Origin: Saccostrea cucullata
Taxonomy: Eukaryota
Assembly (NCBI RefSeq): GCF_032062105.1
Contig: NW_026936221.1
Location: 1 to 64,000, forward strand
DNA: 64,000 nt
Direction: 5' to 3'
In this document: piece after piece, positions 5,526 through 62,606 of the stretch
How positions within the stretch are numbered: the stretch's first letter is position 1
Layout: the number at the start of each line of letters is the position of its first letter
The notes under the pieces: generated by a model
The model's input: only the letters and a program-made list of their open reading frames with translations
Database searches by the model: none
Told to the model about the DNA's origin: nothing
Position numbers and translations under genes: made by a program

Positions 5526-6794
5526 TCACGTTAATGTTATTACTAGGATAAACCACTGAAAGAAAACAAAGATGTAAAAATAGTGCATCATCACTCTGTC
5601 ATATCCCTCCGCTAAAATCTTCCAAGTTACCTTCTTCTCTGCCTCAGTATCTTGCTCATCTTCGTTAGGAGCAATATATTTCTTTTCAAAACTTACATCC
5701 AGTTCCGCAGATTTGTCAGCGACTTTAGCCTTCTTTTTTCGTTTTCCACAGATGTCGTGCAAGAATCGGAGTCGAAGCACATTTAGCACAAAAACACTTT
5801 TACTTGAGACGTGAAAAGTAGGGTCTCTGAAATGAAAACGCATCGTTACAACAGCCAGAACGCTTATAAGTGTGCTCATCGACATTGTTATTATTAAGAA
5901 ATATGACATTAAAGACATTGGCTCTGAAGATTTAGGGATATTGTCACTTAGCAATGTCATAAACACGGCAAATGACAAGAAGATGGTTATAGCATAGGAT
6001 ACACGTTCTCCACTTTCCACTGGTAATGCAAACACTAGAGGGTTGAGTAAGGACAATAAAAGGATAGGGGCTAACATGTTTATGATGAAATAAAGAGATT
6101 TCCTCTTCAAAATTAGTCGAATTTCAATTAAATTATCAAAATGTTCGAGAACAGCCCGTTTCATAAGTGCCTTTTGTAATGTCCATTGGGCATTCGGGGA
6201 GTAGTACGTCGTATCCGCGACTGTCACACCATTCAAGGGGATTAATCTCACTTCATTTGGATAATATCCCCACGGTGATAAAGTGAATGAGCAAGTTTGT
6301 GTATCAAATGGAAATTTATACATATCAACGTTGCAAAGAGTCTGAATCAGACCAGCAGGTATCCATCTTGTAGTTCCGGTGTAAGAAATTCTCCCCAAGA
6401 AGTCTTCATCTCCAAGGGCTTCCATTTTATTTGCTGGGTCAATCAAAAAGATATTAGGAATCCATATTTTTTCCTTGGGAACTGGGATTTCTTCGATGTC
6501 ACCATAGTTGCTTGGTGTCCAAGTCAATCGAAAATCCTGCCAAAACATACCAAGGCCACAAACAATTGACAACACACCAGAAATCTCATCAAAATCATTT
6601 ATTGAAAAAATCATGGGCATAAGAGCGACCTCTAAAGCTTCTGAAAAGTTCGCTTTTGGTCGGATTTCTTTAGAGTAGTTCTTGAAAACCTCTTGAAGAA
6701 GTAATTCAGCGTCAGTATAAAGACCTTGAACATTTGTTAGTGATGTTCCTGAAATTAATAGCAAAAACAAACCCAAATTAGGAACTTTCTTCAT
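5526..6794 (-). CDS. G1: nAChR-like Cys-loop ligand-gated cation channel subunit, non-alpha (no vicinal cysteines), single coding exon, 422 aa
   Basis: Signal peptide (..TNVQG), NYSKEIRP, WIPNI, Cys loop CNVDMYKFPFDTQTC, LKRK pre-M1, M1-M3, GER before M2, DR before C-terminal M4. Confidence 0.96.
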   Translation of the reverse strand: MKKVPNLGLFLLLISGTSLTNVQGLYTDAELLLQEVFKNYSKEIRPKANFSEALEVALMPMIFSINDFDEISGVLSIVCGLGMFWQDFRLTWTPSNYGDIEEIPVPKEKIWIPNIFLIDPANKMEALGDEDFLGRISYTGTTRWIPAGLIQTLCNVDMYKFPFDTQTCSFTLSPWGYYPNEVRLIPLNGVTVADTTYYSPNAQWTLQKALMKRAVLEHFDNLIEIRLILKRKSLYFIINMLAPILLLSLLNPLVFALPVESGERVSYAITIFLSFAVFMTLLSDNIPKSSEPMSLMSYFLIITMSMSTLISVLAVVTMRFHFRDPTFHVSSKSVFVLNVLRLRFLHDICGKRKKKAKVADKSAELDVSFEKKYIAPNEDEQDTEAEKKVTWKILAEGYDRVMMHYFYIFVFFQWFILVITLT

Positions 6795-7489
6795 GATCCA
6801 CTCAAGCTGTCTATTTTGAAATTAAACAGCTATCTGCACACAAATGGTCGATCGTCGAATAATAGGTATGAAATGTAACTGCTGTGTTTCCGTTCACTCT
6901 AATGTTCAGTTCATTTTTTATGTTGATTAGTTTGAAATAGAATTTATAAACAGTCCTCGCTAAAATTCAGTTGTCTCACTGTATTTTAAAAAGAAAAACA
7001 TCCCATGAACAAATATTAATCAGCAATATTTGTTATCACGCTTCAAAAGATAAATGAAATAAGGTCCGACTTGCTGTAAATATTAGCACAGTACTAACGA
7101 AGTCCTCTATTAATGTCTTCACTAAATATCTTTTTTAAAATAAATTTGAATTAGGATGATCTTTTTGATATTTTCTATTTGGGGCGTGTGTAGCCAATGT
7201 TATAAGCCGAGGAATCTGAAATAAGATAAAACAAGGCATCCGACAAGTACTTTTATAGTTCAGCTTCGATCTGCTGCAGGCAAATTGTCTGTCCATCTAG
7301 CTAGGTATTCTATATGAGCCAATCAATGGTTATGATGTGATATCTGAGATTTGGAAGATTACAATTACATTCATAATTATATTGGACACATTTAAAAGGG
7401 TCCAAACCTCCAACAACAACAAAATCAGGACATCAGTAAAAAAAAATTATATAGCAAGATCTTGAGTGTCAAATATTCAAATGTTAAAT

Positions 7490-8780
7490 AGTAAATGTTC
7501 AACCAAGCCTCTTTCGTTACTCCTCTCTAAGATACTGACAGTAGTGAAGGAAAAATTCAAAAGTACTGTGCAACAATATACACAAGAAGTGGTGTGAATC
7601 AGATGTGGGACTCAAAAATTCTAAAGAACTTTTGGACTGGACAATTTGAAATCACAAGATTTTACCAAAATCAACAGCTTAAAAACTTACGACTTTTCTA
7701 CTTTATACACCACCATTCCCCATGATAAATTAAAACCCAGGCTTTTGGATATCACCGACAGCTGCTTTTTCAATAAAAATGGAACTCGTAAATTTACTAA
7801 CCTGGTCATTGGTCATTTGCAAAATTATTTGTTAAAACACATTCTGATTGCACACACAAATACTAGCACTCTGAATTGACATGAAAAAGATGCTTGAGTT
7901 TTGAATTGACAATATCTATGTGGTCTTTGGAGATCAGGTCTTCCAACAATCTATTGGAATTCCATGGGTACAAATTGCGCTCCATTATTAGCAGGCCCAC
8001 TTTATATTCATATGAAGCAGAATTTATGCAAAATCTTATGCGTGCAAAGAAGAAAACACTGGCTGTGGCCTTAAAACTCGACATTTAGATATATCGACGT
8101 ATTGCCAATTAACAATGGTAATTGTCGATACGATATACTTGTATCCTGGTGAGCCTGAGATAAAACATACGACAGAGTTTGACACATCTGTTTCATAGTT
8201 GGATATTTTACTTGAAAAAGACTTAATGGTAATCTAACAACCAAGTTCTATGGTAAACGCATTGACTTTAACTTTTCAATCGTCAAGTTCCCTTACTTAT
8301 GCAGCAATATACCTTCAATACCTTCATCACCTGCTTACTGGGTTTATATCTCTCAGTTGATTCGATACGCAAGACCTTGCTCTACGTATGAACAATTTCT
8401 AAGAAGAGCTATATTACTGACAAACATGTTGATGAAACAAGACTATCAGCAGTCTTGTTTAAAGTAATGATTTCGTAAGTTCTATGGTCGATGCATGACC
8501 TTGTCAGCAAATACAATTTATCATGGGACAAATGCTGACTAACGTTTTTCATACTTATTGTTGGTCCATTATACACTGAATAAACGATTAATTTTCCCGT
8601 TATAACCCGATAATGACAAGGAGCACACGGCGGGTGTGACGGTAGGCAGGGGATGCTCACTCCTCCATAGCATCTGATCCCACCTCTGATGTTTTGGAGG
8701 TCGTGTTTCCTCTGTTTCTATTTATGTATTGTTTTATGGGCTTTGATATTGAATACTGTTCGTTACCTCCATATTCTTTA
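7490..8780 (+). mobile_element. Degenerate 5'-truncated Penelope-like retroelement (RT and 3' end)
   Basis: Frameshifted RT motifs TYDFSTLYTTIPH, GIPMGTNCAP, YSYEAEF, FRYID, SQLIRYAR; conserved 3' motif cggcgggtgtgac...ctgatcccacctct. Confidence 0.88.
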
Positions 8781-10308
8781 TCACTAACTCTACATTTGTG
8801 TCAAGCTCAGACTTTTAGCATTTTTTTTGTTATTAGCTAATGCAAGTAATAAATTGAAAGAATGCAAATAATTGTGAGTTTTAATATTGACAGAAGAAAT
8901 GCTGAATGAGTTTGAACGCTATCAGCTTTCCAATCAAAACGTGTATTAACGATTTAATAGAATCAAATAGATACGATAATTCGGGTTTTACCTGTTCATC
9001 AATGATTATTTAAAACAGCGGAAATTGATTGAAACGAGAGATCGTCCAGACGTCATAATCTTTCAAACCAGTTGAAGTATTCATATTCACCATCGCACTT
9101 TTTAAAAGGCAGCAAATAATCACTTATATTTGTTTAAATCATTCTCGACATCTAACCTTTTCTTTACGAGAATTATTCGAGTCAATCATAAAGATTTAAG
9201 CATATCTTAAAAATGGCTGAATTTAAATTATTTTTACTCACCATTTTGAAATATAGATGTTGTATCTTATTAATTTGAAAACCACTATTTACACACTGAA
9301 TTGTGTACGGATTATTCCGTTCTTCTCGACCATGACAATTAGGAGCAGAATATGCTCATTCCTTCATGGCACCTGATCCCATCTCTAATGATAATAGGTC
9401 CATATCTGCTCCGTTTTGTAATGTTTGAGTGGACTTATCAGCTTAACTAGTGTTCGTCCTCTCCATATTTCAGTAAGAGAAAAACATTTTCAGAGTTAAA
9501 GAATGAAAGTGAAACATATACATATAGTCTGAATTATCATGATTTTAATCTAATCACATGTCAGTCCGTCTTTTCAATCAGAGGCGTAACTACGAGGGCT
9601 GTTCCATAAATAATGTCCTGAACCGTATTACATACAATACAGATATCATATGACATTAAACTTGACTTTCTCTCATTATTGAATCTTTACTGAATTTACA
9701 ACAGTTTATGTGACCACTTTTCATCACATAGTTTCATCGTGAGAAGCTGGAAAACAAGGGCTATTCGAGACACTGCATTATCAATGAATGGTAAAGAATC
9801 AGTAAACTAGAGTGAAAATGAAAGCTACATTAAAGCTGCTGTAAAACTTGTTAAAAATCCCAAAGAAATATTCACTGAAATATGTGACATTTACAGCAAC
9901 CGATGCCTGTTTTTATAGACAAATGATCAGGTGGATTTCAATGATAAAAATTATATAATGGGCATCAAAGATGGGTACCCTCTTTGCCAACAAAAGTTAT
10001 AACAACTTTTGTACTGATTGCCAAAGGATGCGGTGACTTGCGGTGTAACGTTGAATTTTGACCCGGGTTGAAAATTGACCCGGGGGTCATTTTTCAACAT
10101 TGAATACTGAGACCGAAGGTGTTGAATTTAGACCCTAATCCGTTGAAAACTGAGCCGGGTCGTGGAATTTTGATCATGAAACCGGTTCAAAATTCAACAG
10201 CATAAAAACACATATTTATGATTGGGTTTTCACTACTGTGATTTAATTCATGGGTATGAGACCCCGTTTTAGTATTTACTGCAAAAAGTAGTATCCCCTA
10301 TTTGAATA

Positions 10309-10712
10309 AGTGATATCACCTGTTCCAATACATGATATCACCTATTTGATTTGAATTTGTGATATCACCAATTCGAAAAGGTGATATCACTTATTCGAAT
10401 TGGTGATATCACTTATTCGATTGGGTGATATCACCTTTTCCCGTCGAACAGCTGTAGTTTTTTTTTGCTTACAAACTAATTTATTTCACTTATATATCAT
10501 GTATATACAACAAGAAAATCGTAAAAATGAATGAAAACTGGGTAGTCCGAATTTTCTTGGTTCCAGTGTAGTATAATATATATTATAGGGAGCATTCATT
10601 AATGACTGTTGTAAGAAACTCAAAAAGGTAATATCACCTTTTCGAATAGGTGATACCACTTATTGAAATAGGTGATAGCATCTATTTAGCACGGAAAGGT
10701 GATATCACCTTT
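10309..10712. repeat. Array of palindromic GTGATATCAC motifs, ~22-bp period
   Basis: GATATC at 10312,10334,10361,10383,10405,10427; further degenerate copies ~10628-10710. Confidence 0.75.
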
Positions 10713-11698
10713 AATTCTAAGCTCTCTGATTGGCTCAAACTTGATCTGTGATTCACATGATTAAGTATATAACAGCATAAAGACTTGAGTTACTATTTAT
10801 AGAATCTGAAATGCATATTGATTTCATGTTTTTTTTCTTGTGATTATATAGTTTACTATATTGCAGGAGTCCTTTTAGAAAATTTCATTAAAGTGTGTGA
10901 CACCCCCCCCCCCCTCCCTGCCTGGAGATAATTTTTTGTAAAACAGAAATAGTATTGATTTCTCAATTAAAGATAATACAGAGTATGACTTGATGTTTCT
11001 GAAAAAAAAAATTACTACAACTTGTATTAAAATTTTTTAATGTTCCGTAATTGGTGAGACGTACCAATGCCTTTAAGTCTTGAATTAGGATCAAAATGTA
11101 CTTTATATTAAAACATATTGGATATCAAAAATTGATACAAGACATAATCAATTAAATAAATTTGTATTCTGAATAACTAAATCCTCTATAATTACTCCAT
11201 TAATGTATAAAACGAAACATATTTATTTAATATTAAATAGCAACAGCTTAATTTATGCTGATCTCTAGTCTCTAAGTCTTGAAGAGAGAAAACTTCTGCC
11301 TTATTCCCAATATTTTCAAATTTTGTTTTGTCAATCTATGTGATAAAATGATTTATATTCGATAATAATGTTAAACTTTACATTCCTATTTAATTGAGTT
11401 TACAACCAATTCTAGTTTAATTTGTCATATTTCCCAGAATGCAATCATGGCAATTATTGAAAAAGAATTAAAAAAACATCGCATAGGAGATCATAGAGAT
11501 AAAATCATGTTATAAGATGAGAAGTTTAACGAATAGGAATTGTATTTTTTTTTCGAATAGAAATGATGGTAGTATGTTTTCGAACAACAACTTTATTGCA
11601 TATAAACCAAATAATCATCGATTAAAAAAGATAAAATTATCGAATATGAATGACAAAATTAGCGACTAGCAACCAATTGTTTTAAATATTAATGACAT

Positions 11699-38733: not shown

Positions 38734-41587
38734 ATTATTCCAAAAAAGAAATCTGAAAATCTGTTCATTAAACAAGGTTGTTCGTCGATTATGGCACTTT
38801 TCATTATATCACCAAACTAGAATTTTAGATAAAAATCCGCATTTTTACTTTCCATGCTAATGATATCATCTAACGCCGTGTCTGTTTCAATGTCAGAGGC
38901 ACTTGATTAAATAAATGTTCCGAATTACAAAATATTCCTTCGCCACCTGACCACTGTCCATAATTCCTGCTAAGCTATGCGACTGCAACTGAATCAATCA
39001 ATGAATGAAAGAATGAAACAATCAAGATTTCCATGACCTCTCTAAAATCCCTCTCTCTTTTCTTTTGTGTACTTATTAGATGGTTTCAGGATGCCTGATC
39101 TCGTATTATGTAATTATCGAACTCCCCTAGTTAACTTTTGAATATTTAAATGGCAATGTTTTAAGTAAAATATATGCCTCATACAATTCTTTATGTAGAA
39201 TTATCACTGATTTTTTTTCAATAGCATTAAAATACACAGAGAAATATTTGCAAAGATTCAATTTTAACAATATACATGTAATTGAGTTTTGAAACCATTA
39301 TTTACATGTAAAACACAATAATTTAGCATCAAAAGTCTTAATTTTCTTCCCTAACATTATAAAAATGCTACAAAAAATTATTCTTTGAAAAATGCTAAAA
39401 ATTTAAGGATACTAGTAGGTATCTATATTTAGATATATGCCCCAACATAAGAAAAACACAATTTCATACTTAAATAATACCGAAACGGAGATACTTTAAT
39501 AACTAAAATATCTAACTAAATTTTACACAGGGTTCATTTGTAGATACGTTACTTTACCCCCCTCTCCAACCACCACTACTCCACCCTCCCCCACCAAAAA
39601 AAATATTTTACCTCTACCATTCGGTGCAGATTTTTAACAGTAAGAGAAAACTTGACCGACATTTCTCTAAAAATAAAAGAGTATATATTATCATGTTACG
39701 AAAATTACTAATAGTTCAACGCTATATTTTACAGCCAACTTGAATGTACATTAGTTCTAGCTAGAATTCTAAAGTTTGGTCTTTCGAGTTCATCATAATT
39801 ATGTAAAACTGAACAACTGAACATTTAAAGTTCAACTTTATGTTCAATTTATTCATTCAAACCATATTAATGGTACATGAGGTTCAACAATATATGTACA
39901 ATATATAGAAAAAATAATATACAAGATATACGTGAAATGGCGGAAATACATTCATATAAAGTAACAAAAACAATTATGGAGGACAGACTTTTTCATATAC
40001 TCTATTTATGTAACTGCATAGTTTAATTAATACCTTGGAGTCAGCAGATGACAACAATTCTGAGAATTTGAAAAAAACTGGTCTATTAAAATATTTACTA
40101 AGAAGATATTTTTTTTCTATATTTGGAAAAAAATTTACATTCTAAAATGTAGTGATACTCATCAGCTATTTGTCCATTATTACAAAGATTACATAGTCTA
40201 TCATTTTTGTAAACATCTAAAACGATGATTTGCTGACGTCTGTCGGATTGGTAGTTAATTGGTCACCATGTCAAGAATAACAACCCCCTTTGTCATTGTT
40301 TCGGTTTGTTCCCATCTCGCCATAACTGTAAAATTTAGCATTCCCATTTCGCCTTAGTAACCTCTCAGGTGAATTAAGGTGAAAAAGATTTAATATATTT
40401 AGCATAAAGTATTAAAAAACTTAGTATTACATGTATTATTTCATTCACTGTATTCATAAATTCCCATTACCTGTTAAATTCAATCTAAATTTTCAATCTT
40501 GACTTTGAAAAAGAGTAGGCTTTCTGAGGGCCGCCAGAGGAACCAAAAACTTTTTCAAAAACGGTCAAATAAACTTAACGTCACAACCTATGACTTAAAT
40601 GTTACCAACAATAAATAATCAATCAAAAAAGTATTTCAATGGTATTGTGAACAGGTGCGCCTAAATTACTTTATTCTAAGTAGTTATAACATATCATTAT
40701 AATTCAGATGCCTATTGCCAGCAATTTTTAATCAAAAGTCAATGTGCGCGAACTTAATGGACAACCATCGTTCATGTATCACGTTGTGTTTTTTTCCAGT
40801 TCATTCGATGCAAAAGAACGTTTAATAAACACGTATACCTGTCGATTGGTCGAACGTTCACTGAAGAATAGAGGATTAATTTTTTGTTCTCAGTTTCTGC
40901 TAAATTGTCTACCCATTTATTCGACCGAGACAAACGCTAAAGCTGGCCTGATGGATCCGCGCACGTGTTTAATTCTGTTCGCCATCTTTATTTTTTTTAT
41001 CACATGCGTTGAAGTTGATATCATGTGAAACCTCAAACTGTGTAATATTATTATGCACTAAACCGATCAAATAAACTGAAAATTTTCCTCCGTAAAATGA
41101 TTGAAATATTGCCAACTCAGTGTTTTTTTTTATAAACAGTCTATTTAATGCACCAATCATTTTTATACGTATAGTTTGAAAAACGACAAGATTAATTTCA
41201 GTACTAGTATTCATCAAGTATCCTTTGAATTATTTTATATCATTATGAACAGACGTTCAATAAACGTTGTCAGTTTTAAAGTTATGTCATGATGCTTCGT
41301 AAGAAAAAGACGAATTAGTAAGTAAAGGGTCCTCTATTCTACGGTACACGGCAAGATGTTTTTCTCCCTTGTTTCTCGTGACCTTCTGACCTTCCTCTGT
41401 ACTTTCGTAAAGTTTAGAAACAACTGGGTCATTATCCTACAAAATCGAAACAAGAATAGTTTCACTTTCGTCCATATTCTACTGTTGAAAAATTAAAGAA
41501 AAAAAATGCAATTGATTGCCTGAAAATTAATTGCAGAATGAACTTGAACGCTATCAGCTTTCCAAACCAACAATTCTTTATCATCTA

Positions 41588-41752
<165 letters not shown>

Positions 41753-41854
41753 TTACAGTTAGTAATTATATGTACCAAGTCCATTTCGTTTATATCAATT
41801 TTCCTAATTGCTCACAGTATTCACACATCCTTTACTTCACAAAGCCATTTCCTA

Positions 41855-42025
<171 letters not shown>

Positions 42026-42241
42026 CTAATAAAAAGAACAGAAAGGTTTTAAATCATACATTACGCATCAAAATTCAGAAATACGTAAGAGATGAATAAG
42101 ACGTAGGAAATCTATGGCTTATGTGACATAACAGCAAAATTTCTCTCATTACTTCAAGAATTAAGATCAGTATTTATATTCATTTCTCCTTTCATAATTG
42201 ACAGTTGAAAACGTTTGAATGGAAAATAAAACATTTTTTTA

Positions 42242-42508
<267 letters not shown>

Positions 42509-46548: not shown

Positions 46549-47820
46549 TTACAGCAACGCCATTACAAGGACGCACCACTGTATGAAAACAAAGACGTAA
46601 AAATAGTACGTCAAAAGTCTGTCATATCCTTCCGCCAAATCCTTCCAAGTGACTTTTTCCTTTCCTTCTTCAAAATTTTGCGTATTGTTACCTTCAGCCA
46701 CATTACTCTTTTCAAAAACTACATCCACTTTCACAGATTTAGCTTTGACTTTAGTCTTGCTTTTTTTACAGACGCAGCACAGACATTGGAATCTCAAAAT
46801 ATTAAGCATAAAAACACAAGGACGTGAGACGGGTAACAGGGGATCTTTGAAATGAAAACGCATTGTAACAACAGCCAAAACGCATATCAATGTGCTCATA
46901 GCCATTGTTATGATTAAGAAGTAAGACATCAAAGACATTGGTTCTGAAGATTTGGGAATATTGTCACTGAGCAGTGTCATAAAAACGGCGAAAGACAAAA
47001 AGATTGTAATAGCATAAGATACACGTTCCCCACTTTCAATTGGTAAAACAAACACAAGAGGATTGAGTAAGGACAGAAGAAGGATTGGTGCTAACATGTT
47101 AATGACAAAATACAGAAACTTCCTCTCTAAAATTAATCCAATTTCAAGTAAATTATCATAATCAGCGAGTGCAGTCCGCTTCATCAATGTCCCTTTCAAC
47201 GTCCACTGAGCATTCTCGGAGTAGTAGCTTGTGACCACTGTCGTTAAGTTATTGTGAGGAATTAATCTTGCTTCAGATGGCGAATATCCCCACAAAGCTA
47301 TTGTGAAAGTGCACGATTGTGTGTCGAAAGGGAATCTGTACATGTCAACGTTGCACGAAGTCTGAAGTAGACCTGCTGGTACCCATGTCACTTGGCCAGA
47401 ATAAGAAATTCTGCCCAAGAAATCCTCGTCCCCAATGGCTTCCATCTTTTTGGCTGGGTCAAGCAAAAATATGTTTGGGACCCATAGTCTCTGTTTGGGA
47501 ACAGGGAGATGTTCGATGCCACCATAGTTGCTTGGTATCCAGGTCAGTCGAAAATCATGCCAAAACAACGTAAAACTACTAACAATGGACAGAACTCCTG
47601 AAACTTCATCGAAATCATTTACTGAGAAAACAATAGGGCTAACGGAGACCTCTAAAGTTTCTGACATGTTCTCTTTTGGTCGGATTTCTGTTGAGTAGTT
47701 CTGAAACACATCCTGGAGAAGTGATTTGGCGTCCGAATACGGATACCCATGGACAGATGTTGACAAAATTCCACTGATCAACAGCAGAGAAAAATAAAAA
47801 CAAGCAGATTCTACTTTCAT
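46549..47820 (-). CDS. G4: nAChR-like Cys-loop cation channel subunit, non-alpha, single coding exon, 423 aa
   Basis: Signal peptide, Cys loop CNVDMYRFPFDTQSC, 4 TM, GER-M2. Confidence 0.96.
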   Translation of the reverse strand: MKVESACFYFSLLLISGILSTSVHGYPYSDAKSLLQDVFQNYSTEIRPKENMSETLEVSVSPIVFSVNDFDEVSGVLSIVSSFTLFWHDFRLTWIPSNYGGIEHLPVPKQRLWVPNIFLLDPAKKMEAIGDEDFLGRISYSGQVTWVPAGLLQTSCNVDMYRFPFDTQSCTFTIALWGYSPSEARLIPHNNLTTVVTSYYSENAQWTLKGTLMKRTALADYDNLLEIGLILERKFLYFVINMLAPILLLSLLNPLVFVLPIESGERVSYAITIFLSFAVFMTLLSDNIPKSSEPMSLMSYFLIITMAMSTLICVLAVVTMRFHFKDPLLPVSRPCVFMLNILRFQCLCCVCKKSKTKVKAKSVKVDVVFEKSNVAEGNNTQNFEEGKEKVTWKDLAEGYDRLLTYYFYVFVFIQWCVLVMALL

Positions 47821-49744: not shown

Positions 49745-51019
49745 TCACACTGCCAATACCACTCCAAGGATAAGCCACTGTAGAAATACCAGAACGTAAA
49801 AGTAGTTCGTTAGTATTTTATCATATCCCTTCGCCAAAATTTTCCAAGTGACTTTTTCCTCTTTTTCATCATCTTCTATACTTTTGTCAACGGCTATTTT
49901 ACTTTTTACAAAAACTATATCCAATTTCGAGGACGTGTCAGTGACTTTAGACTTCTTTTCACGTTTTCTACAAATACGACATAGGCATCGGAGTCTCAAA
50001 ACATCCAGCATGAAAACACATTTACTTGAAACTGGCAATTTAGGATTTTTGAAATGGAGTTGCATTGTGACAACAGCCAAAACGCATATTAAAGTACTCA
50101 TAGACATCGTTACTATTAAAAAGTAAGACATTAAAGACATAGGCTCAGACGATTTAGGCATACTGTCGCTGAGCAAAGTCATAAATACGGCAAAAGATAA
50201 GAAGATGGTTATAGCATAGGACACACGTTCTCCACTTTCAACCGGTAATGCAAACACAAGAGGGTTGAGTAAGGACAATAAAAGAATTGGTGCTAACATG
50301 TTTATGACGAAATATAGGGATTTCCTTTTCAGAATCAACTGTAATTCGATTAAACTATCATATCCTCCAAGTGCAGATGGTTTCATAACAGTCTTTTCTA
50401 ACGTCCACTGAGCATTTGACGTGTAATAAGTCGTATCCATGGTTGTGAAATTGCTAAAAGGTGTTAATTTAGCTTCAAATTGTGAATATCCCCACAAAAC
50501 TAATGTAAAAGAGCATGTCTGTACATCAAAAGGAAATTTATACATGTCAACGTTGCACAAGGTCTGAATTAAACCCCCTGGTACCCATGACACCATACCC
50601 GAATTTGAAATTCTGCCTATGAAGTCGTTACTTCCAATTGCTTCCATTTTATTAGCTGGATCAATCAGAAAGACGTTAGGCACCCATAACATCTCTTTAG
50701 GCACAGGAATATCCTGGATGCCACCATAGTTGTTGGGTGTCCAGGACAACCGAAAATCATGCCATGTCAAGAAAAATCCACACACAATGGACATTACACC
50801 AGAGACTTCATCGAACTCATTCACTGAAAACATGAACGGCAAAAGAGAAACTTCTAACACTTCAGACAAGTTCTCTTTGGGGCGGATTTTTGTTGAGTAG
50901 TTCTTGAAGACATCCTGGAGAAGAAAATCGGCATCTGAATACATAAAGCCATATACAGATGTCAACGTTGTTCCAATGGTTAACACAAAACACCAACACA
51001 ACAAAGAATTCTTCGTCAT
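49745..51019 (-). CDS. G5: nAChR-like Cys-loop cation channel subunit, non-alpha, single coding exon, 424 aa
   Basis: Signal peptide, Cys loop CNVDMYKFPFDVQTC, 4 TM, GER-M2. Confidence 0.96.
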   Translation of the reverse strand: MTKNSLLCWCFVLTIGTTLTSVYGFMYSDADFLLQDVFKNYSTKIRPKENLSEVLEVSLLPFMFSVNEFDEVSGVMSIVCGFFLTWHDFRLSWTPNNYGGIQDIPVPKEMLWVPNVFLIDPANKMEAIGSNDFIGRISNSGMVSWVPGGLIQTLCNVDMYKFPFDVQTCSFTLVLWGYSQFEAKLTPFSNFTTMDTTYYTSNAQWTLEKTVMKPSALGGYDSLIELQLILKRKSLYFVINMLAPILLLSLLNPLVFALPVESGERVSYAITIFLSFAVFMTLLSDSMPKSSEPMSLMSYFLIVTMSMSTLICVLAVVTMQLHFKNPKLPVSSKCVFMLDVLRLRCLCRICRKREKKSKVTDTSSKLDIVFVKSKIAVDKSIEDDEKEEKVTWKILAKGYDKILTNYFYVLVFLQWLILGVVLAV

Positions 51020-53193: not shown

Positions 53194-54474
53194 TCAAAAT
53201 TTAACAGATATAGCAAATGATACCCAGAAAAAGACAGTAAAAAAATAGAAGTAGTACATTAATACTCTATCATAGGCACGCGCCACACTTTTATAAGTGG
53301 TAACATTGTCCAATTCATCACTTTCTCTGTTTTCCGATTTACTAGTTCCTACACTAGTCTTCACAAACACTACATCTTTGACTTCATTTTCTGCACCAAT
53401 CCTAGCAGATCCGGATTTTTTCTTCTTACAACAATTAAATATAAAATGGAGTTGAAGAAGTTTTAAAACATTCCGTAATTTTCTAGAAACTTTTGCTTCT
53501 GGTTCTTTTAAATGAAGATACATAGTGAATATTGTTAAAATAGTCATGAGTGTGCTCAAACACATCGTAAAAATCAAAAAGTAAGACAGAAGAGCCATAG
53601 GTTCTGATGATTTTGGCATGTTCTCACTGAGTAAAGTCATAAATACAGCAAAAGATAAGAAAATCGTAATTGCATAGGAAATGCGTTCTCCGCTATCCAT
53701 AGGTAAAACAAACACCAATGGATTCAGAAAGGATAGGAGAAGAATCGGGGCCAACATGTTGAGAATGAAATATAGAGACTTTCTTTTCAGAGTCATCGTG
53801 ATGCGTATCCGACACTGGTATTGTCCAAGATTTGACTGGGCCATGTGAGTCTTTATCAAATCCCACTGGCCATTTTTGTTGTAGAAAGAAGTGTCTACAT
53901 TAGTGACATTATTCCATGGAAGCAAGATGGCATCTTCAGGGGTATATCCCCAGAGCATAAAATTAAGCGAGCATTCCTGTGTGTCGAACGGAAACCTGAA
54001 CATGTCAATGCTACAAATGGAAGTAAGTAGTCCACCTGGCACCCATGACATGTTGCCATCCGAATACATCCTTCCGAGAAAATCGCCATCTCCGATAGCT
54101 TCCATTTTATTGGCAGTGTCTATCAGAAACAGCCTTGGGGCCCAAATCTTTTTGAGTGGAACGGGCAAGTTGTCCAGTCCTCCGTAAGTGCTCGGCGACC
54201 ACGCGAGGCGAAAATCATTCCATTCCAGTCTGAAGGCGGCTACCACTGACAGTATTCCGGATATTTCATCTAAATTGTTCAGTGATATTAGATAAACATA
54301 AATGCCCACTTTTGTTGGTTCGGACAGATTCGTCTGAGGACGTAAATCAGGATTATAATTCCCAAATAAGTTTTGGTAAAGAGAGGAACTGTCTGAAAAC
54401 ATTGCTCCCTGAACTCGTGTTCCAAATATAATGCAAATGAGAAACATGGAAGAAATAAACCACATCGTCTTCAT
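53194..54474 (-). CDS. G6: nAChR-like Cys-loop cation channel subunit (second subfamily), non-alpha, single coding exon, 426 aa from first ATG
   Basis: ORF-track start at 54498 is TTG; first ATG is 54474 (MKTMWF); Cys loop CSIDMFRFPFDTQEC, 4 TM, GER-M2. Confidence 0.95.
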   Translation of the reverse strand: MKTMWFISSMFLICIIFGTRVQGAMFSDSSSLYQNLFGNYNPDLRPQTNLSEPTKVGIYVYLISLNNLDEISGILSVVAAFRLEWNDFRLAWSPSTYGGLDNLPVPLKKIWAPRLFLIDTANKMEAIGDGDFLGRMYSDGNMSWVPGGLLTSICSIDMFRFPFDTQECSLNFMLWGYTPEDAILLPWNNVTNVDTSFYNKNGQWDLIKTHMAQSNLGQYQCRIRITMTLKRKSLYFILNMLAPILLLSFLNPLVFVLPMDSGERISYAITIFLSFAVFMTLLSENMPKSSEPMALLSYFLIFTMCLSTLMTILTIFTMYLHLKEPEAKVSRKLRNVLKLLQLHFIFNCCKKKKSGSARIGAENEVKDVVFVKTSVGTSKSENRESDELDNVTTYKSVARAYDRVLMYYFYFFTVFFWVSFAISVKF

Positions 54475-54547
54475 CTGTGTCTTCGTAAAATTCTCCAATC
54501 TAATAACTCCTGATGTTATTTGTCAGACAGGCAGAATAAATAGGACA

Positions 54548-54555
54548 TTTATATA
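54548..54555 (-). promoter_or_regulatory. Candidate TATA box of G6
   Basis: TATATAAA ~75 bp upstream of ATG, conserved at 62680-62687 for G7; TATA-like also at 37050-37057 (G3) and 51082-51088 (G5). Weak evidence in AT-rich DNA. Confidence 0.35.
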
Positions 54556-55093: not shown

Positions 55094-57660
55094 TTTTTAA
55101 GCCCCCGTAAAAACGAAGTTTTGGGAGTATAAAGTTTTTTTCGTGTCCGTCCGTCTGTCTGTCTAGCTGTCTCTCTGTTTGTCTGTTTGTCCACAAAAAT
55201 TTTAAACTTGCCCATAACTTTTGATTTAGTGGAGCTATGACTTTCATACTTCACGTGTGTATTCCTTGTGACAAGACCTTTCTTTGGGTACCACCAAATT
55301 TGACCTTGACCTTTGAGTTTTACCCACTTTTACAAAAAATCTCAAATTATTACTTTTGCCATACCTTTTGAACATTAGATACCAGGACATTTATACTACA
55401 CATATATATTCTCTGAGGAAATTTCATTGGGTGCCAACAACCATGACCTTTTGACCTTGACCTTGGAGATTTCCGTCCTTGTAAAAACTAGAACTGTCCA
55501 ATAGGGACAAATACCCCCGCGGGTTTTTCAGAGTAGGTGCAATTTCACAAATATTTATGGATCTATTAAGAGGTGTTCACTATTTTCTTAGAAACAATTG
55601 GAGTCTCCACAAACATACATATACGCACATATCTTTCATGTGGGACATGAATCACTTGATATTTAAAAAATATATATATTTTAAAAATATATATATTTTA
55701 AAATAATATGTATTTTTAAAATATATATATTTTAAAAATATATCAATTTAACTAATTAATCTTCAAAACTTAACCTTTACCAAACAGATTTTAGAAATAG
55801 GAGACTGCATGGCCATCAAATGACAAATGCTATTTAAACTGACCAGCACTTCTGTCCAATTCCCAAAGGATTCAGATAAGAGCTGCTTCATCAGAGATAT
55901 GCTCTAACAGAAATGATTGAGACAGCTAGCTTCCCTACATAGAACTCATTAATTAATCTTTGACTGGAAGCATGTCCACTAATTACTATCATGGGATGAA
56001 TGGATCTTAACTTTCTCCTTTGTAATGCAATCGAAATGCACAATTGCATGTTTCATTCTTAAATTAAATCTGAAAACAAAGATTTTGTATAACTTTGTTA
56101 CAAAGATTTATACTGAAAAAAATTTGTGTAATCTTGATGCATCATTTTGAATAAGGTTCCTGCATGATTATTAGATTTTTAGGGGCTATCTACCAATTTT
56201 TTTTACATACTTGATTCATTTGGATTTGATATCAGACTAAAAGTTTCAATCTGAAATTCGCATGGAGAATGGGCATGGGAAATGATTCCAAAAACACCCC
56301 CCTCCCCCCACACACACAATATGATTAGTTTTAATTATATTACACGAAATCAATTAAGTTTATTATACAACTTCATAGTGTATTATACAATATCCAATTA
56401 GTTTGAAGTTGCTTTTTCTCAAATTCATTAAATAAGTTAGGCTAGTCACTAAAACAATTTTAGACTGAATCCTTAGCCCAGTTCCCAAGAGACAGATAAC
56501 TGCTTGATCTACCAGTTAGCTCCTTACACTAAACTAATTAATTTCTCTCTAACTTGACATGCAATTTTCTGTTATCAAAATTCTCCTTGACCAGTGCTTG
56601 ATAATTATACCCATGGGAGAGGTAGATTTTCTCTTATAAAATAACATTTGTTATGGATTGCTGTAAAGTATATAATGAAATTTTTTTTTTCTTAATTTAA
56701 CATGTTTTAAATAGGGATATTGCAACAGTCTTACATTGTTGAGATTGTGTAATTCAAAAGTAAAAGATAGTGTTTTCTTTTTTAATTTTACTTTAATTAC
56801 TAGTAAAGGTCACAGTGACCTTGAAATAGGTCAGGACACACCCTCTACCCAAGATGCATAAATTGGCCAAGTTTGATGATTGTAAGTCTAACAGTTCTCC
56901 AGTTATAAGCCAAACAAAACAACAAAATAAAAAACAAAAAATGCCTGTAAAATGCACAAAAATCATCCAATCATGATGAAAATAACAGGTGCAAAGCTTC
57001 ATATGGTGAAAAATAAGTGTGCAAGTTTTCAGACAAATCCATCCAATAGTTTCTGAGAAATGGTCCGGACGAAATCTTGTCTACAGACAGATGGACAGAC
57101 GGACAAGCTGATTTCAATATACCCCCCTAAACTTCGTTTGCAGGGGTATAAAAACTTTAACCTTGGCCATAACTTTTGAATAGTAAGGGATAGGGCTTTC
57201 ATACTTCACATATTTAATCCTTGTGAATTTTGACCCTTTGACCTTGACTTTGGAGTTTGACCTTCTTTTATAAAGCAAAGCTTGACATAACTTTTAAAGA
57301 GTTAAGGCTAGTGCTTTCATACTTTAAATATTTAATCCTCGTGACAAGACCTTTCATTTGATAGCAAGACCTTTGACCCTTTGATCTTCGTCTTGGAGTT
57401 TGACGTACTTTTTAAAATTTTTAACCTTAGCTAGGGCTTTCATACTTCACATATGTATTTCTTGGCAAGAACTTTCATTGGATACCAATTATCTTGATCT
57501 TTTGACCTTGACCTTGGAGATTTACTTACTTATGAAAAATCTTTAACATTTACTTTCATATTTCAGAATTGTATTTCCAGTGAGTTTGCATTTAAGAATA
57601 TTTAAATCTTCGCTATGTTGCCAGACGAGGGCATCAGTGTTTCAAAAACACATCTTGTTT
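55094..57660 (+). mobile_element. HINE interrupted by a second, oppositely oriented HINE
   Basis: Start gcccccgtaaaaacgaagttttgggagtata, (GTCC/GTCT)n, tgaccttg repeats, end gtgtttcaaaaacacatcttgtt; empty site at ~51135. Confidence 0.8.
55486..57151 (-). mobile_element. Nested HINE-like element (~1.7 kb)
   Basis: Termini aactagaactgtcc..ggaca and cccctaaacttcgtttgcaggggtataa with (ACAG/ACGG)n; missing from the paralogous host copy at ~63910-63920. Confidence 0.78.
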
Positions 57661-58382
57661 TTCAAAAAATCCTTCTTGATATTCAGTTGTCTCATTTTGC
57701 ATCCAAAGAAAATAAAATGTCTCTTTAAAAATGTTCAGACAGGTATGGGTAATTAGAATTCAATCACTCTAAAATTATAAGCACTTCTTCTGAAGAAAGT
57801 AAAAACACTTTAACAATAAGCATTTTATTTCCTTATTGCACAAAATTTCCACGGTATCTTCGTAGAACTAGGACATTTCTTTGCCATTTTTCTGAACATG
57901 ATTTACATGTTTACATGTTAACATATGATGTTTTAAACTGAGAATATAAACACTTGTCTTCTGTACAAAATAGACTTACGTCAAGACGATAGGAGAAGGT
58001 TCTTCATAGATACTCCCCAAACATTGTCCCCCTATGGTTATAGTATTAGCAGATCAACGATAAAATACAGAGAAGAGTCTTCGGCATTTCATCTCATCAT
58101 TATCATAATACTGATGAGCAAAGAATGTACCGACATGAGTTTTGCAATGTTCGCAATCAAATTATAAAATACCAAACATATTTTTTAAAGTGTATTCTTA
58201 TGTTATCTAGTATAAGAAGCAATGATCGAATTTCTTTGGAATAAAGCCTTCCTCAAATAAGAGGAATTACATCGGTCTGTATTATATATCTGATCTACTA
58301 ACATGACTAATTCATCTCTTATTTCATCTCCTCTTTAATTGCATCTAGTAAATTGCTTTATCATCAAACATGAACATACCAT

Positions 58383-58883
58383 AACAAGAGGCCCAGGGGC
58401 CACATCGCTCACCTGAGCAAATCGGCTAGGAAAAAGCACAGATCAGATCAGAACAGAAAAGTTCACTGAAGGGAGGGAGGCTTGAATTTTAATACTACTT
58501 GAGATTGTCTTCATATTAATACAGCATATGACTTTGCTGTTCTTGATAAAAAGATTTTTTGAAAACATTTTCTTCCTATATATAACTTCATAATAATTTG
58601 AATTTGATTCCTCATTGTTTCCCTCTCTACCCCAAAGGGCCATGATTTGAATAAATTTATATCTTCAATACATGAGGCTGCTTAAATGTCAATATGACTA
58701 AACATAGCTTTTCTGTTCTTAGGATTTTTTCCTTTATTTTTCTAAGTAAAACTTTGATCCACCATTGTGGCCCCATCCTACCCTTGGGGGTTATGATTTG
58801 AACAAATTTAAATCTACACTACCCGAAAATGCTTCCATATAAATACTAGTATTACTAAACACGGTTTTGCTATTCTTGGGAAG

Positions 58884-58923
<40 letters not shown>

Positions 58924-59618
58924 TGTAAAACTTGGATCCCCCATTGTGGCCCACCTATCCCTGGGGGTTATGATGTGAACAAACTAGAATCTATACTACC
59001 TGAGGATGATTCCACATAAGTAAATTATATCTAATCATGGCTTTGAAGTACTTGAGAAGACGATTTTAAAATATTTCCCTATCTAGTCCAATGTAGAACT
59101 TTGATCAGCCATTTTGCCCCTCCCCAACCCCCAGGGGTCATGATTTGAATAAACTTGAATCTACACTACCTGACGATGGTTTAACATAAATTTCATCTTT
59201 CCTGGCCCAGTGATTCCTGAGAAGAAGATTTTTAAAGATTTTTCCTATACATTCCTATATAAAATTTTGATTGGCCATTGCGGAACCACCCTACCCACAG
59301 GGGTCATGATTTGAACAAACTTGAATCCACGCTACATGAGGATGCTTCCACATGAGTTTCATCTTTCCTGGCCCATTGAGTCTTGAGAAGAAGATTTTTA
59401 AAGATTTTCCTTATATACTCCTATGTAAAACTTTGATCAGCCATTGTGGCCCCAACCTACTGGGGGTCATGATTTGAACAAACTTGAATCTACAATACCT
59501 GAGGATGCTTCCACATGAGTTTCATCTTTCCTGGCCTAGTGGTTCTTGAGAAGAAGATTTTTGAAAAATGCCATTAATGTTTCACTAATTCATAATTATC
59601 TCCCCTTGGAAATGGGCC

Positions 59619-59655
<37 letters not shown>

Positions 59656-59758
59656 TAAGGATACTTTGTGGCAAGTTTGGTTGAAATTGCCCCAGTAGTT
59701 CTTGAAAAGAAGATGAAAATGTGAAAAATTTATGACGATGCCGACAACGCCAACGGAA

Positions 59759-59790
<32 letters not shown>

Positions 59791-59804
59791 GGCTTAGTTG
59801 AGCT
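58383..59804 (-). mobile_element. HINE/pearl-type element with diverged ~166-bp repeats and a (TA)n tract
   Basis: Same termini as 28135-29770 (aacaagaggccc..gctcacctgag; agctcacttgagcc); absent from the paralogous spacer at ~51850. Confidence 0.85.
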
Positions 59805-60014
59805 GCAAACTAAAAACTGTGCATCAGTTACCCAAAACAAATGAATGGAAAAGGCCTAAATTTGAAGAAATGGCCGGGGTGTCACTTATTTTTCCGATAT
59901 ATGTATATGTACATTATTAATTATTCAATATACTGTAGAAAACTTTTTGAATGTGCCCCCTCAAAAGTTATGTCTGATAATTTTGTTTTCACCAAAACTT
60001 TTGCTTCATGAGGG

Positions 60015-60180
60015 ATATGGAGATAACGAAAAGTATTCAATATCAAAGTTAAAAAAAACGATAACAAATAGGAACACAGCAAACATTGGCCTCCGAAACA
60101 TCAGAGGTGGGATCAGGTGCCATGGACAAGTGAGCATCCCCTGCCGACCGGTCACTACCGCCATGTGCTCCCTGTCATGA
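60015..60180 (-). mobile_element. Penelope-like 3' tail fragment
   Basis: Reverse complement of the 8610-8775 motif; absent from the paralogous spacer. Confidence 0.75.
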
Positions 60181-60364
60181 TATTATATTGAAAAATTTGA
60201 ATTCTTTATGCCAGTGAAACTTATAAAAAAGAATTTCTCATCATACAAATACTAAACCAATCTGGGGCAAAACACAGGATGTTATTGAGTATTGGGTTCC
60301 AGCAAGGGACGTTTAACGATTTAACAAAGAGTCTTTTTACACAACAGTCAAATTATATTCTTAA

Positions 60365-61108
60365 GAATATCCTCCGCCAGGAAGGATAACTCCAAAAATT
60401 GATATTTAATTTGAAATGCATCAAAATGAAGCTTGAATTTTTTTTTTCATGCAACAATTTTCATTTTATTCATCTTCATAAGATTCAAGATTTTTGGAAG
60501 TCTAGGAAAAGGTCTTAAAAGTTGACATTTGTACCCTATAATAGGAAAAAAATTAATACAGTTTTAGAGAAATAAGATTTATGGATACCTGAATAACATC
60601 ACCTCCTTATTAAAGACAAGACATAACATTCAGTAAAGGAATAGAAGAGGTCATTTATTTATTTTTTTTAACCCAACCTTAGATATCAATGCTTATAAGC
60701 ATGATATGGAATTAGAAGTGATTTGAGGTGTCTTGCAATGATAACAAAGTCATTTACACTATGTAATATAGAATACATGACGGAAATAGAAGACAAAAAA
60801 TACCACATAAGTATAAAAATCATGACATTTGCTAAGAATGTCTGGATATCTATCGTTTTTTGACCTAAAATATATTTGTTGATCAATTTCCAATTAGAAA
60901 ATGCATTGCTTATATTCCTATTTCCTTTTTCCGCAAAAATATTGGAAATTTGACAATTTTCCCTATATAATATAATTAACTTTAATCTTTAACTTTAAAG
61001 AAATACTGTGGATAAATTTACATAGGAACTTTGTGGATTCAAAGATACTTTAATGAGTATTTTTGATTACTTAACTGCTAATTTTATAAACCTGAGGTTC
61101 GTGCTACG
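60365..61108. mobile_element. TTAA-flanked insertion without clear TIRs
   Basis: TTAA at 60361-60364 and 61109-61112; absent from the paralogous spacer at ~52405. Confidence 0.55.
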
Positions 61109-61325
61109 TTAATAAAAATTAATGTCTTGTACTTAAATAGATATTTACATAAGGCGAGGATGATGTGAACAAAATAACATTATCATATAACTTTCATGTG
61201 AGAAATATGTCAAAAATCATATATCATTTACATGAGTAGCAGTGCATCTTTTAAGGAATTCTATATAACGAAAATAAATTACATATGTGTGTTGAACAGT
61301 TTTAAAAACGTCTATGAAACATTCA

Positions 61326-62606
61326 TCAAAATTGAACCGAAACAGCGTATGATATCCAGAAAAAGAAAGTAAAGAAATAGAAGTAGTACATTAATACTCT
61401 ATCATAGGCACGAGCCACACTTTTATAAGTCGTAACATTGTCTAATTCATCACTTTCTCTGTTTTCAAGTTTAGTAGTCCCTACACAAGTCTTCACAAAC
61501 ACTACATCTTTGACTTCATTTTCTGCACCAACGCTAGCAGATCCTGATTTTTTCTTCTTACAACAATTAAATATAAAACGGAGTTGAAGAAGTTTTAAAA
61601 CATTCAGTACTTTTCTAGAAACTTTTGCTTCTGGTTCTTTTAAATGAAGACACATAGTGAATATTGTTAAAATAGTCATGAGTGTGCTCAAACACATCGT
61701 AAAAATCAAAAAGTAAGAAAGAAGAGCCATAGGTTCTGATGATTTTGGCATGTTGTCACTGAGTAGAGTCATAAATACAGCAAAAGATAAGAAAATCGTA
61801 ATTGCATAGGAAATGCGTTCACCGCTATCCATAGGTAAAACGAACACCAATGGATTTAGAAGGGATAGGAGAAGAATTGGGGCCAACATGTTGAGAATGA
61901 AATATAGAGACTTTCTTTTCAGAGTCATCGTGATGCGTATCAGAGTCTGGGATGGACCAAGATTTGACTGGGCCAAGTAAGTCTTCATCAAATCCCACTG
62001 GCCATTTTTGTTGAAAAAAGAAGTGTCTACATTTGTAACATTATTCCATGGAAGCAAGATGGCATCTTCAGAAGTATATCCCCAGAGCGTAAACTTAAGT
62101 GAGCATTCCTGCGTGTCAAACGGAAATCTGAACATGTCAATGCTACATTGGGAAGTAAGTAGTCCACCTGGCACCCATGACATGGTGCCATCAGAATACA
62201 TCCTTCCGAGAAAGTCGCCATCTCCGATAGCTTCCATTTTATTGGCAGTGTCTATCAGAAACAGCCTTGGGGCCCAAATCTTTTTGAGTGGAACGGGCAA
62301 GTTGTCCAGTCCTCCGTAAGTGCTCGGCGACCACGCGAGGCGAAAATCATTCCATTCCAGTCTGAAGGCGGCTACCACTGACAGTATTCCGGATATTTCA
62401 TCTAAATTGTTCAGTGATATTAGATAAACATAAATGCCCACTTTTGTTGGTTCTGACAGATTCGACTGAGGGCGTAAATCTGGATTATAATTCCCAAATA
62501 AGTTTTGGTAAAGAGAGGAACTATCTGAAAACATTGCTCCCTGAACACTTGTTCCAAATAAAATATAAATGAAAAACACTGAAGAAATAAACCACATCGT
62601 CTTCAT
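61326..62606 (-). CDS. G7: nAChR-like Cys-loop cation channel subunit, close paralogue of G6, 426 aa from first ATG
   Basis: ORF-track start at 62630 is TTG; first ATG is 62606; Cys loop CSIDMFRFPFDTQEC, 4 TM, GER-M2. Confidence 0.95.
   Translation of the reverse strand: MKTMWFISSVFFIYILFGTSVQGAMFSDSSSLYQNLFGNYNPDLRPQSNLSEPTKVGIYVYLISLNNLDEISGILSVVAAFRLEWNDFRLAWSPSTYGGLDNLPVPLKKIWAPRLFLIDTANKMEAIGDGDFLGRMYSDGTMSWVPGGLLTSQCSIDMFRFPFDTQECSLKFTLWGYTSEDAILLPWNNVTNVDTSFFNKNGQWDLMKTYLAQSNLGPSQTLIRITMTLKRKSLYFILNMLAPILLLSLLNPLVFVLPMDSGERISYAITIFLSFAVFMTLLSDNMPKSSEPMALLSYFLIFTMCLSTLMTILTIFTMCLHLKEPEAKVSRKVLNVLKLLQLRFIFNCCKKKKSGSASVGAENEVKDVVFVKTCVGTTKLENRESDELDNVTTYKSVARAYDRVLMYYFYFFTFFFWISYAVSVQF

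What the first reader, a model, noticed from the sequence alone, without database searches (positions are those of the whole stretch)
5526..62606. Tandem array of seven intronless, non-cholinergic nAChR-derived channels: candidate bivalve chemoreceptor family
Seen: seven co-oriented single-coding-exon Cys-loop genes in 57 kb, forming two subfamilies (G1-G5, G6-G7). They share an invariant pore and have variable ligand-binding loops, a lost ACh site, and recent gene birth and death. Established: canonical nAChR genes are intron-rich; lophotrochozoans, bivalves especially, have large expansions that include intronless tandem copies of mostly unknown function; cephalopod chemotactile receptors (octopus CRT1, squid CRB1) are intronless, tandemly arrayed nAChR derivatives that lost the ACh site and detect environmental compounds. 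Inference: this is a parallel sensory system in a bivalve, possibly for waterborne, settlement or microbial cues on gill, mantle, palp or larval foot. The expansion itself is known; the sensory role is the untested part.
Basis: partly seen in the sequence, partly recalled or inferred. Interest (0 to 1): 0.9.

Follow-up and report, generated by a model that had tools for sequence, protein, structure and literature searches.

The report
Oyster orphan nicotinic-like channel array
This is a real tandem cluster of single-exon genes for nicotinic-receptor-like cation channels in an oyster, partly nested inside a tRNA-methyltransferase gene; they have lost the acetylcholine site and belong to an already published bivalve expansion, and a role in sensing the environment is possible but not shown.

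Summary
Observation confirmed. The window holds seven co-oriented single-coding-exon Cys-loop genes (six intact, G2 frameshifted) in two subfamilies, from an oyster (probably Saccostrea cucullata); two more copies lie beyond it. The cation-type pore is under strong purifying selection (omega 0.05). The acetylcholine site is dismantled on both faces (Y93, W55 and the loop C tip lost; W149 kept), but that is the rule among this genome's intronless copies. Pocket-rim sites evolve fastest (omega about 1), without robust positive selection. No special kinship to cephalopod CRT1/CRB1 was found. Pacific-oyster orthologs are in the published expansion (PMC6896357): low expression, larval peak, not gill-enriched; one was assembled from a gill RNA-seq run. 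Verdict: new members of a known family of orphan channels; external chemosensing about 0.3. The scan noted similar clusters elsewhere in this genome (s1-721951).

The parts
5526..6794 (-). G1, intact nAChR-like subunit, 422 aa
17309..18612 (-). G2, nAChR-like copy frameshifted by a 35-nt tandem duplication; 92% nt to G1
17912..17986 (.). 35-nt tandem duplication that shifts the frame of G2 in loop C
35693..36967 (-). G3, intact, 424 aa; AlphaFold2 model pLDDT 83.8 with nAChR fold
46549..47820 (-). G4, intact, 423 aa, inside METTL1 intron 2
49745..51019 (-). G5, intact, 424 aa, inside METTL1 intron 2
53194..54474 (-). G6, intact, 426 aa, second subfamily, inside METTL1 intron 2
61326..62606 (-). 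G7, intact, 426 aa, second subfamily, inside METTL1 intron 2
42263..42447 (-). METTL1 (tRNA m7G46 methyltransferase) exon 3
   Evidence: PF02390 hit and AG/GT ends
41912..42025 (-). METTL1 exon 4
41627..41728 (-). METTL1 exon 5
41287..41436 (-). METTL1 exon 6 with stop codon; the six exons sum to 765 nt = 254 aa + stop, the length annotated in other oysters
32870..32981 (-). decayed copy of METTL1 exon 5
30657..30770 (-). decayed copy of METTL1 exon 5
25341..25530 (-). decayed copy of METTL1 exon 5 region
20707..20894 (-). decayed copy of METTL1 exon 5 region upstream of G2
8897..9078 (-). decayed copy of METTL1 exon 5 region upstream of G1
4964..9592 (.). 4.7-kb duplication unit holding G1, 90% identical to 16762-21402 (G2 unit)
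16762..21402 (.). 4.7-kb duplication unit holding G2

Best explanation
These genes encode orphan, non-cholinergic, cation-selective pentameric ligand-gated channel subunits of the bivalve intronless nAChR expansion. SHOWN: one intronless ancestor sat in METTL1 intron 2 before oysters split. It duplicated in tandem, and in Saccostrea some duplications carried the host's 3' exons, which put G1-G3 downstream of the host and left exon-5 relics. The pore and a pocket core (W149, Y151, Gly at 55, Ile at 93, Arg at 109; alpha1 numbering) are held by purifying selection, while the pocket rim changes at about the neutral rate. INFERRED: the subunits form homomers or within-array heteromers that bind a small non-acetylcholine molecule at the subunit interface, open a Na/K/(Ca) pore and depolarise the cell; paralogs differ in tuning. 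The open, polar pocket fits a water-soluble ligand better than the greasy ligands of octopus CRT1. Whether the ligand comes from seawater (about 0.3) or from inside the animal (about 0.3) is unresolved. The confidence below is for 'functional cation channels gated by a non-ACh small molecule', either source.
For: Fold and domains. Pore: E at -1', L9', V13', no PAR motif; omega 0.048 in TM1-3, and M2 pN = 0 while pS is 0.4-0.7 in five of six pairs among G1/G3/G4/G5, so selection rather than gene conversion. ACh site lost on both faces: Y93 to I/L/V, W55 to G/S/A, loop C about 5-6 residues shorter without the vicinal cysteines, no Tyr at the Y198 position. W175 and R135 (G1 numbering) are invariant in 20 oyster sequences, and the G/I/R/W set is kept in two Pinctada relatives. 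Pocket positions chosen from nAChR numbering have mean omega 0.54 against 0.22 for the rest of the ECD; none of 100,000 permutations or 207 shifts reached it. Nesting in METTL1 in five oyster genomes. A Magallana ortholog is assembled full length from SRR27190616, a C. gigas gill RNA-seq run.
Against: No ligand or current has been measured. Alvinella Alpo4, a similar orphan, stayed silent in extensive screens (PMC10338036). The pocket positions are solvent-exposed and partly overlap sites already seen to be fast, so fast change may be relaxed constraint; M8 vs M8a gave p = 0.17, 0.22, 0.14 and 0.04 (the last from one site in one subset). Rim residues also differ between Saccostrea orthologs. 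Same-strand nesting means METTL1 pre-mRNA can mimic low expression.
Confidence: 0.6

Rival explanations
1. External chemoreceptors: ionotropic receptors in sensory cells of larvae, gill or mantle that detect waterborne, food, microbial or conspecific molecules, evolved in parallel to cephalopod CRs.
For: Intronless tandem birth-and-death array; conserved pocket core with fast rim, as described for CRs (bioRxiv 10.1101/2025.10.28.685082); transcript in gill; gill is the organ with most nAChR expression and little ChAT (PMC6896357); Magallana paralogs have homogenised C-terminal halves but diverged ECDs (pS 0.11-0.29 vs 0.45-0.57 for two of three pairs).
Against: No robust positive selection; no CR affinity; C. 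gigas orthologs at or below about 1 RPKM in gill, mantle and palp and low at pediveliger.
Confidence: 0.3
2. Receptors for an internal non-ACh signal (transmitter, paracrine metabolite, steroid or osmolyte) in larvae or epithelia.
For: The same pocket core is kept across oysters and Pinctada, which fits one constant ligand class; larval expression peak; invertebrate nAChR-like channels have been retuned to dopamine (bioRxiv 10.1101/2025.10.31.685654).
Against: Receptors for one internal ligand rarely need nine copies with a changing rim; DopC keeps YxCC and the aromatic cage, these do not.
Confidence: 0.3
3. Accessory (non-binding) subunits that co-assemble with canonical alpha subunits and tune ACh-gated heteromers, like vertebrate alpha5, beta3 or muscle beta1 (own knowledge).
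For: Both binding faces lost while assembly and pore surfaces are conserved; rim omega near 1 fits no binding role.
Against: Invariant pocket-core residues; near-identical M2 across 50%-diverged paralogs suits self-assembly; vertebrate accessory subunits are single-copy.
Confidence: 0.2
4. Channels gated without an organic ligand (pH, ions, osmotic or temperature change) or constitutive cation leaks in epithelia.
For: Pore strongly conserved, rim unconstrained; oyster gill nAChRs respond transcriptionally to salinity, temperature and air exposure (PMC6896357).
Against: L9' and V13' gate residues are intact; conserved W149, Y151 and Arg109 line the pocket.
Confidence: 0.12
5. Mostly redundant copies in a duplication-prone intron; only one or two matter.
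For: Two of nine copies are frameshifted in this assembly; recent 90-94% duplications; low expression.
Against: G3, G4 and G5 have kept open frames despite pS about 0.5, with omega far below 1; G4 and G5 have one-to-one orthologs in S. echinata.
Confidence: 0.08

Closest known systems
Expanded intronless nAChR-like genes of bivalves (Jiao et al. 2019, PMC6896357)
   Same: Intronless, tandem, non-alpha, diverged ligand-binding domain, unknown ligand. The Cys-loop of C. gigas OYG10005188 in that paper is identical to that of the Magallana ortholog of the G6 subfamily.
   Different: The paper does not describe this locus, its nesting in METTL1, its pocket signature or its selection pattern.
Cephalopod chemotactile receptors (octopus CRT1, squid CRB1)
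   Same: nAChR-derived, intronless, arrayed, ACh site lost, conserved inner pocket with variable rim.
   Different: No special sequence affinity (G1: CRT1 143 bits vs alpha3 174; CRT1 absent from the top 60 with the family profile). By inferred mapping CRT1 has Tyr at loop D and Leu at loop B where these have Gly/Ser/Ala and Trp. Sensory expression and ligands are shown for CRs, not here.
Alvinella Alpo4 orphan receptor (PMC10338036)
   Same: Lophotrochozoan nAChR-like subunit without vicinal cysteines, loop B Trp kept, no known agonist; third-best PDB match to the G6 ECD (98.5 bits).
   Different: Alpo4 keeps the key aromatic residues; these have lost Y93, W55 and the loop C tyrosines.
Vertebrate non-alpha nAChR subunits (beta2, beta4, gamma, delta)
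   Same: Same fold (Z about 30-33), cation pore, no vicinal cysteines.
   Different: They keep the loop D Trp of the complementary face and are intron-rich (own knowledge); here that Trp is lost.
DopC dopamine-gated cation channels
   Same: nAChR-derived cation channels with a non-ACh agonist.
   Different: DopC keeps YxCC and the aromatic cage; these do not.

Membership tests
Cys-loop pLGIC superfamily | C-x13-C loop, LBD plus four-helix membrane domain | tested here: met
Cys-loop pLGIC superfamily | assembles as a pentameric gated channel | not tested
   A complex prediction would not separate the rival readings, so it was not run
Cation-selective nAChR/5-HT3 branch | Glu at -1', no PAR motif, hydrophobic 9' and 13' | tested here: met
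   best PDB matches are nAChRs
nAChR alpha subunit | vicinal cysteines (YxCC) in loop C | tested here: not met
   absent in all 20 oyster sequences; loop C shortened
nAChR alpha subunit | Y93, Y190, Y198 of the aromatic cage | tested here: not met
   I/L/V at 93; tip deleted; D/Q/E/K/N/S at the 198 position
nAChR alpha subunit | W149 in loop B | tested here: met
   invariant W175
nAChR complementary (beta/gamma/delta-type) subunit | W55 in loop D | tested here: not met
   G/S/A in all 20
Bivalve intronless nAChR expansion (Jiao 2019) | intronless LBD+TM genes in tandem arrays in a bivalve genome | tested here: met
   ortholog listed in the paper's supplement
Cephalopod chemotactile receptors | member of the CR clade | tested here: inconclusive
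   No CR sequence was available for a tree; similarity scores rank CRT1/CRB1 below canonical nAChRs, which argues against membership but is biased by the fast evolution of CRs
Cephalopod chemotactile receptors | hydrophobic pocket with loop D Tyr and loop B Leu | tested here: not met
   Gly/Ser/Ala and Trp at the positions inferred to match CRT1 Y58 and L153; the mapping is by constant offset, not by an aligned structure
Cephalopod chemotactile receptors | intronless, tandem, ACh site lost | tested here: met
Cephalopod chemotactile receptors | diversifying selection on the outer pocket | tested here: inconclusive
   fastest sites lie on the rim, but M8 vs M8a is not robustly significant
Cephalopod chemotactile receptors | expressed in sensory epithelium and gated by environmental compounds | not testable with these tools
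DopC dopamine-gated channels | YxCC and aromatic cage retained | tested here: not met

The most novel reading that the evidence does not exclude
This oyster clade is part of an independent bivalve ionotropic chemoreceptor system: nAChR-derived cation channels in larval or gill sensory cells that detect soluble environmental molecules through a conserved Trp/Arg/Gly pocket core with a variable rim, evolved in parallel to cephalopod chemotactile receptors.
Probability: 0.3. Interest if true: 0.75.

Novelty: new member of a known kind. Interest (0 to 1): 0.33.

Why it matters
Bivalves carry 100-200 nAChR-like genes with no known ligand, and the receptors for settlement, feeding and valve-closure cues are largely unknown. 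If this clade senses the environment, it would be a second molluscan origin of chemoreceptors from nAChRs, with use in aquaculture and antifouling. The array is a convenient test set: single-exon genes, traceable orthologs in five oyster genomes, a fixed pore and a short list of variable pocket sites. The METTL1 nesting is a practical warning: a UniProt gene model fuses host exons to these receptors, and bulk RNA-seq values for them may carry host signal.

Tried and rejected
Gene conversion as the cause of the invariant pore: rejected for the window genes, since synonymous sites in M2 are diverged while amino acids are not; G1/G3 (pS 0.12), the Magallana C-terminal halves and the C7405 copy do show conversion-like patterns. 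Positive selection: M8 beats M7 (p = 1e-4) but not M8a (p = 0.17); three ECD reruns gave p = 0.22, 0.14, 0.04; my own script, fixed topology, recombination not modelled; not claimed. CR kinship: four PDB sequence searches and a structural comparison put canonical nAChRs first; no tree with CRs could be built. Intron in S. echinata P0003: it is a 506-nt element with terminal inverted repeats and a TA duplication, not an ancestral intron. Receptors as alternative last exons of METTL1: 19 Magallana contigs are colinear with the genome and carry no host exon; each gene has its own ATG and hydrophobic leader; not supported, not excluded for the G6-type gene. METTL1 nesting outside oysters: no host exons within 10 kb of the Pinctada or Pecten relatives. 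ESM Atlas gave only generic LBD clusters. The two 2023 Nature CR papers are not held.
Full report
Observation. The window has no N. Seven minus-strand single-ORF Cys-loop genes lie at the stated span: G1 5526-6794, G2 17309-18612, G3 35693-36967, G4 46549-47820, G5 49745-51019, G6 53194-54474 and G7 61326-62606. G1 and G6, the two scanned, have the Pfam ligand-binding and membrane domains; the AlphaFold2 model of G3 (pLDDT 83.8) superposes on nAChR subunits at Z about 30-33. G1/G3/G4/G5 are 67-74% identical, G6/G7 92%, and the two groups about 50%. G2 is a 92% copy of G1 within a 4.7-kb duplication and is frameshifted by a 35-nt tandem repeat.

Organism and family size. The genome is 1.17 Gb in 23,869 contigs. 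The closest named relatives are from Saccostrea echinata (74-82%), Ostrea edulis (58-70%) and Magallana gigas (about 59%), and a protein named Saccostrea cucullata sits on a contig of the same length (124,283 nt) as own contig C22911, so the genome is most likely S. cucullata (inference). At least 99 long single-frame nAChR-like matches exist genome-wide (a lower bound, but probably inflated by haplotigs). This is the expansion described by Jiao et al. 2019 (PMC6896357): 99-217 genes per bivalve, many intronless and in arrays of up to 12.

Four exons of METTL1 (tRNA m7G methyltransferase, PF02390) lie between G4 and G3 on the same strand (42447-41287). Exons 1-2 are on contig C22911, followed by a ninth receptor copy (G9) at the contig end; a frameshifted G8 lies just past the window. 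The six exons have GT/AG ends and sum to 254 codons plus stop, the length annotated in other oysters, and an MFS gene upstream is syntenic with Magallana angulata. So G4-G9 lie in METTL1 intron 2. Receptors inside the METTL1 span are annotated in S. echinata, O. edulis, M. gigas, M. angulata and C. virginica, but no host exons were seen near the Pinctada or Pecten relatives. Five decayed copies of exon 5 lie among G1-G3, and similar relics occur in S. echinata. Inference: tandem duplications that included the host's 3' end pushed copies out of the intron.

History. A protein tree (FastTree, 71 sequences, midpoint root, no CRs or canonical subunits) puts all array genes in one oyster clade (support 1.0). 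The G6-type genes group with a Magallana gene that also lies first in its array, so the two subfamilies predate the split of these genera; G4 and G5 have one-to-one orthologs in S. echinata. G1/G2 and G6-G9 are recent (92-94% nt). An intact G2-like gene on contig C7405 (97% nt) and a G1-like gene on C3805 (98%) are probably the other haplotype, so the death of G2 may be allelic.

Pore. M2 has Glu at -1', Leu 9', Val 13' and no PAR motif, the cation-selective pattern (established knowledge). Omega by region on 20 oyster coding sequences: TM1-3 0.048, ECD outside loops 0.124, loops A-F 0.277, intracellular loop 0.36, TM4 0.35. In M2, pN is 0 while pS is 0.4-0.7 in five of six pairs among G1/G3/G4/G5, so the constancy is purifying selection.

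Pocket. Mapping to alpha1 numbering through the HMMER alignment: Y93 is I/L/V, W55 is G/S/A, W149 is invariant, and loop C is 5-6 residues shorter, without Y190 and the vicinal cysteines and with no Tyr at 198; the model shows a tight hairpin. These subunits thus fit neither face of a canonical ACh site. Specific to this clade is a fixed set Gly55/Ile93/Arg109/Trp149, also present in two Pinctada relatives. The fastest ECD sites (G1 59, 82, 141, 143, 178, 180, 192, 215) fall on loops G, D, E, B, F and C; pocket positions average omega 0.54 against 0.22 elsewhere. But their rate is about neutral: M8 vs M8a gave p = 0.17, and 0.22, 0.14 and 0.04 in reruns. Exposure to solvent was not controlled for.

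Relation to chemotactile receptors. CRT1 scores 143 bits against G1 (alpha3 174), drops out of the top 60 with the family profile and with the G6 ECD, and CRB1 ranks with 5-HT3A for the membrane region. By an inferred offset, CRT1 pocket residues Y58 and L153 (bioRxiv 10.1101/2025.10.28.685082) correspond to Gly/Ser/Ala and Trp here. So there is no ground to file these genes as CRs, although the pattern of a fixed core and a variable rim works like theirs. A 2026 preprint already reports CR-like sequences in bivalves and proposes that divergent molluscan nAChRs may be chemosensory (PMC13174522); whether this clade is among them could not be tested.

Expression. For Magallana orthologs, 19 Logan contigs of 1.5-2.3 kb hold the whole ORF, start 94-270 nt before the ATG and are unspliced; one comes from SRR27190616, listed as C. 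gigas gill RNA-seq in PMC11171025; the library types of the others are unknown. In Jiao's tables, OYG10005188 (Cys-loop identical to the G6-type ortholog) has 0.7-1.9 RPKM in seven organs including gill (1.1), 3.9 in female gonad, 4.9 in eggs and up to 7 in D larvae; this flat, maternal pattern may reflect fused METTL1 exons, since a UniProt model (P0139) joins host exons 1-2 to three receptors. Its neighbour OYG10005187 (assigned by adjacency only) is absent from eggs, peaks at 5.3 RPKM in late D larvae, is about 1 in pediveligers and is not listed among genes above 1 RPKM in adult organs. Other oyster nAChRs reach 40-80 RPKM in gill. This does not favour a gill, palp or settlement role for this array, but cannot exclude sparse sensory cells.

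Mechanism and verdict. Most likely these are functional cation channels gated by a small non-ACh molecule (0.6), split about evenly between an environmental and an internal ligand; accessory subunits (0.2), non-ligand gating (0.12) and redundancy (0.08) are the other readings. Identity, nesting, pore constraint and loss of the ACh site are shown; assembly, ligand and cell type are inferred. The family and the chemosensory hypothesis are both published; new here are the conserved METTL1 nesting, the duplication route and the pocket signature. Novelty: new member of a known kind; interest 0.33.

Noticed in passing
window 41287-42447 and G000:C22911:115836-117967: METTL1 is split over two contigs; its intron 2 holds six same-strand receptor genes, which implies C22911 and C18358 are adjacent.
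   Followed up: yes
G000:C18358:67321-68595 (L031 5322-6596): G8, a G6-type copy with a 2-nt and a 1-nt deletion; pseudogene or assembly error.
   Followed up: partly
P0139 (UniRef100_A0A8W8N008): A 1167-aa M. gigas model fuses METTL1 exons 1-2 to three receptors; probably an annotation artefact, though a real splice from host exon 2 into the first receptor was not excluded.
   Followed up: partly
L037:10442-10949 (S. echinata): A 506-nt MITE-like element with terminal inverted repeats and a TA duplication interrupts one receptor gene and is annotated as a GT-AG intron; a possible case of intron gain from a transposon.
   Followed up: partly
L039 (M. gigas array): Paralogs have similar membrane and C-terminal halves (pS about 0.1-0.3) but diverged ECDs (pS about 0.45-0.57), suggesting conversion or chimeric duplication that spares the ligand-binding half.
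   Followed up: partly
window 19463-19855 and 7625-7894: Fragments of a very high-copy element (21,001 candidates genome-wide) resembling a reverse-transcriptase segment, duplicated with the G1/G2 unit.
   Followed up: partly
window 28247-29505 and 58539-59816: 166-bp tandem satellite arrays, the same period as the known oyster satellite (own knowledge); a 147-bp array lies at 26356-27410.
   Followed up: no
window 2410-2866 and 11695-12114: Short-period arrays (about 21 nt) that are also their own reverse complement.
   Followed up: no
G000:C3805 and G000:C7405: Probable haplotigs of the G1 and G2 regions; the C7405 gene looks like a G1/G2 mosaic in its first 450 nt. Haplotigs inflate gene counts in this assembly.
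   Followed up: partly
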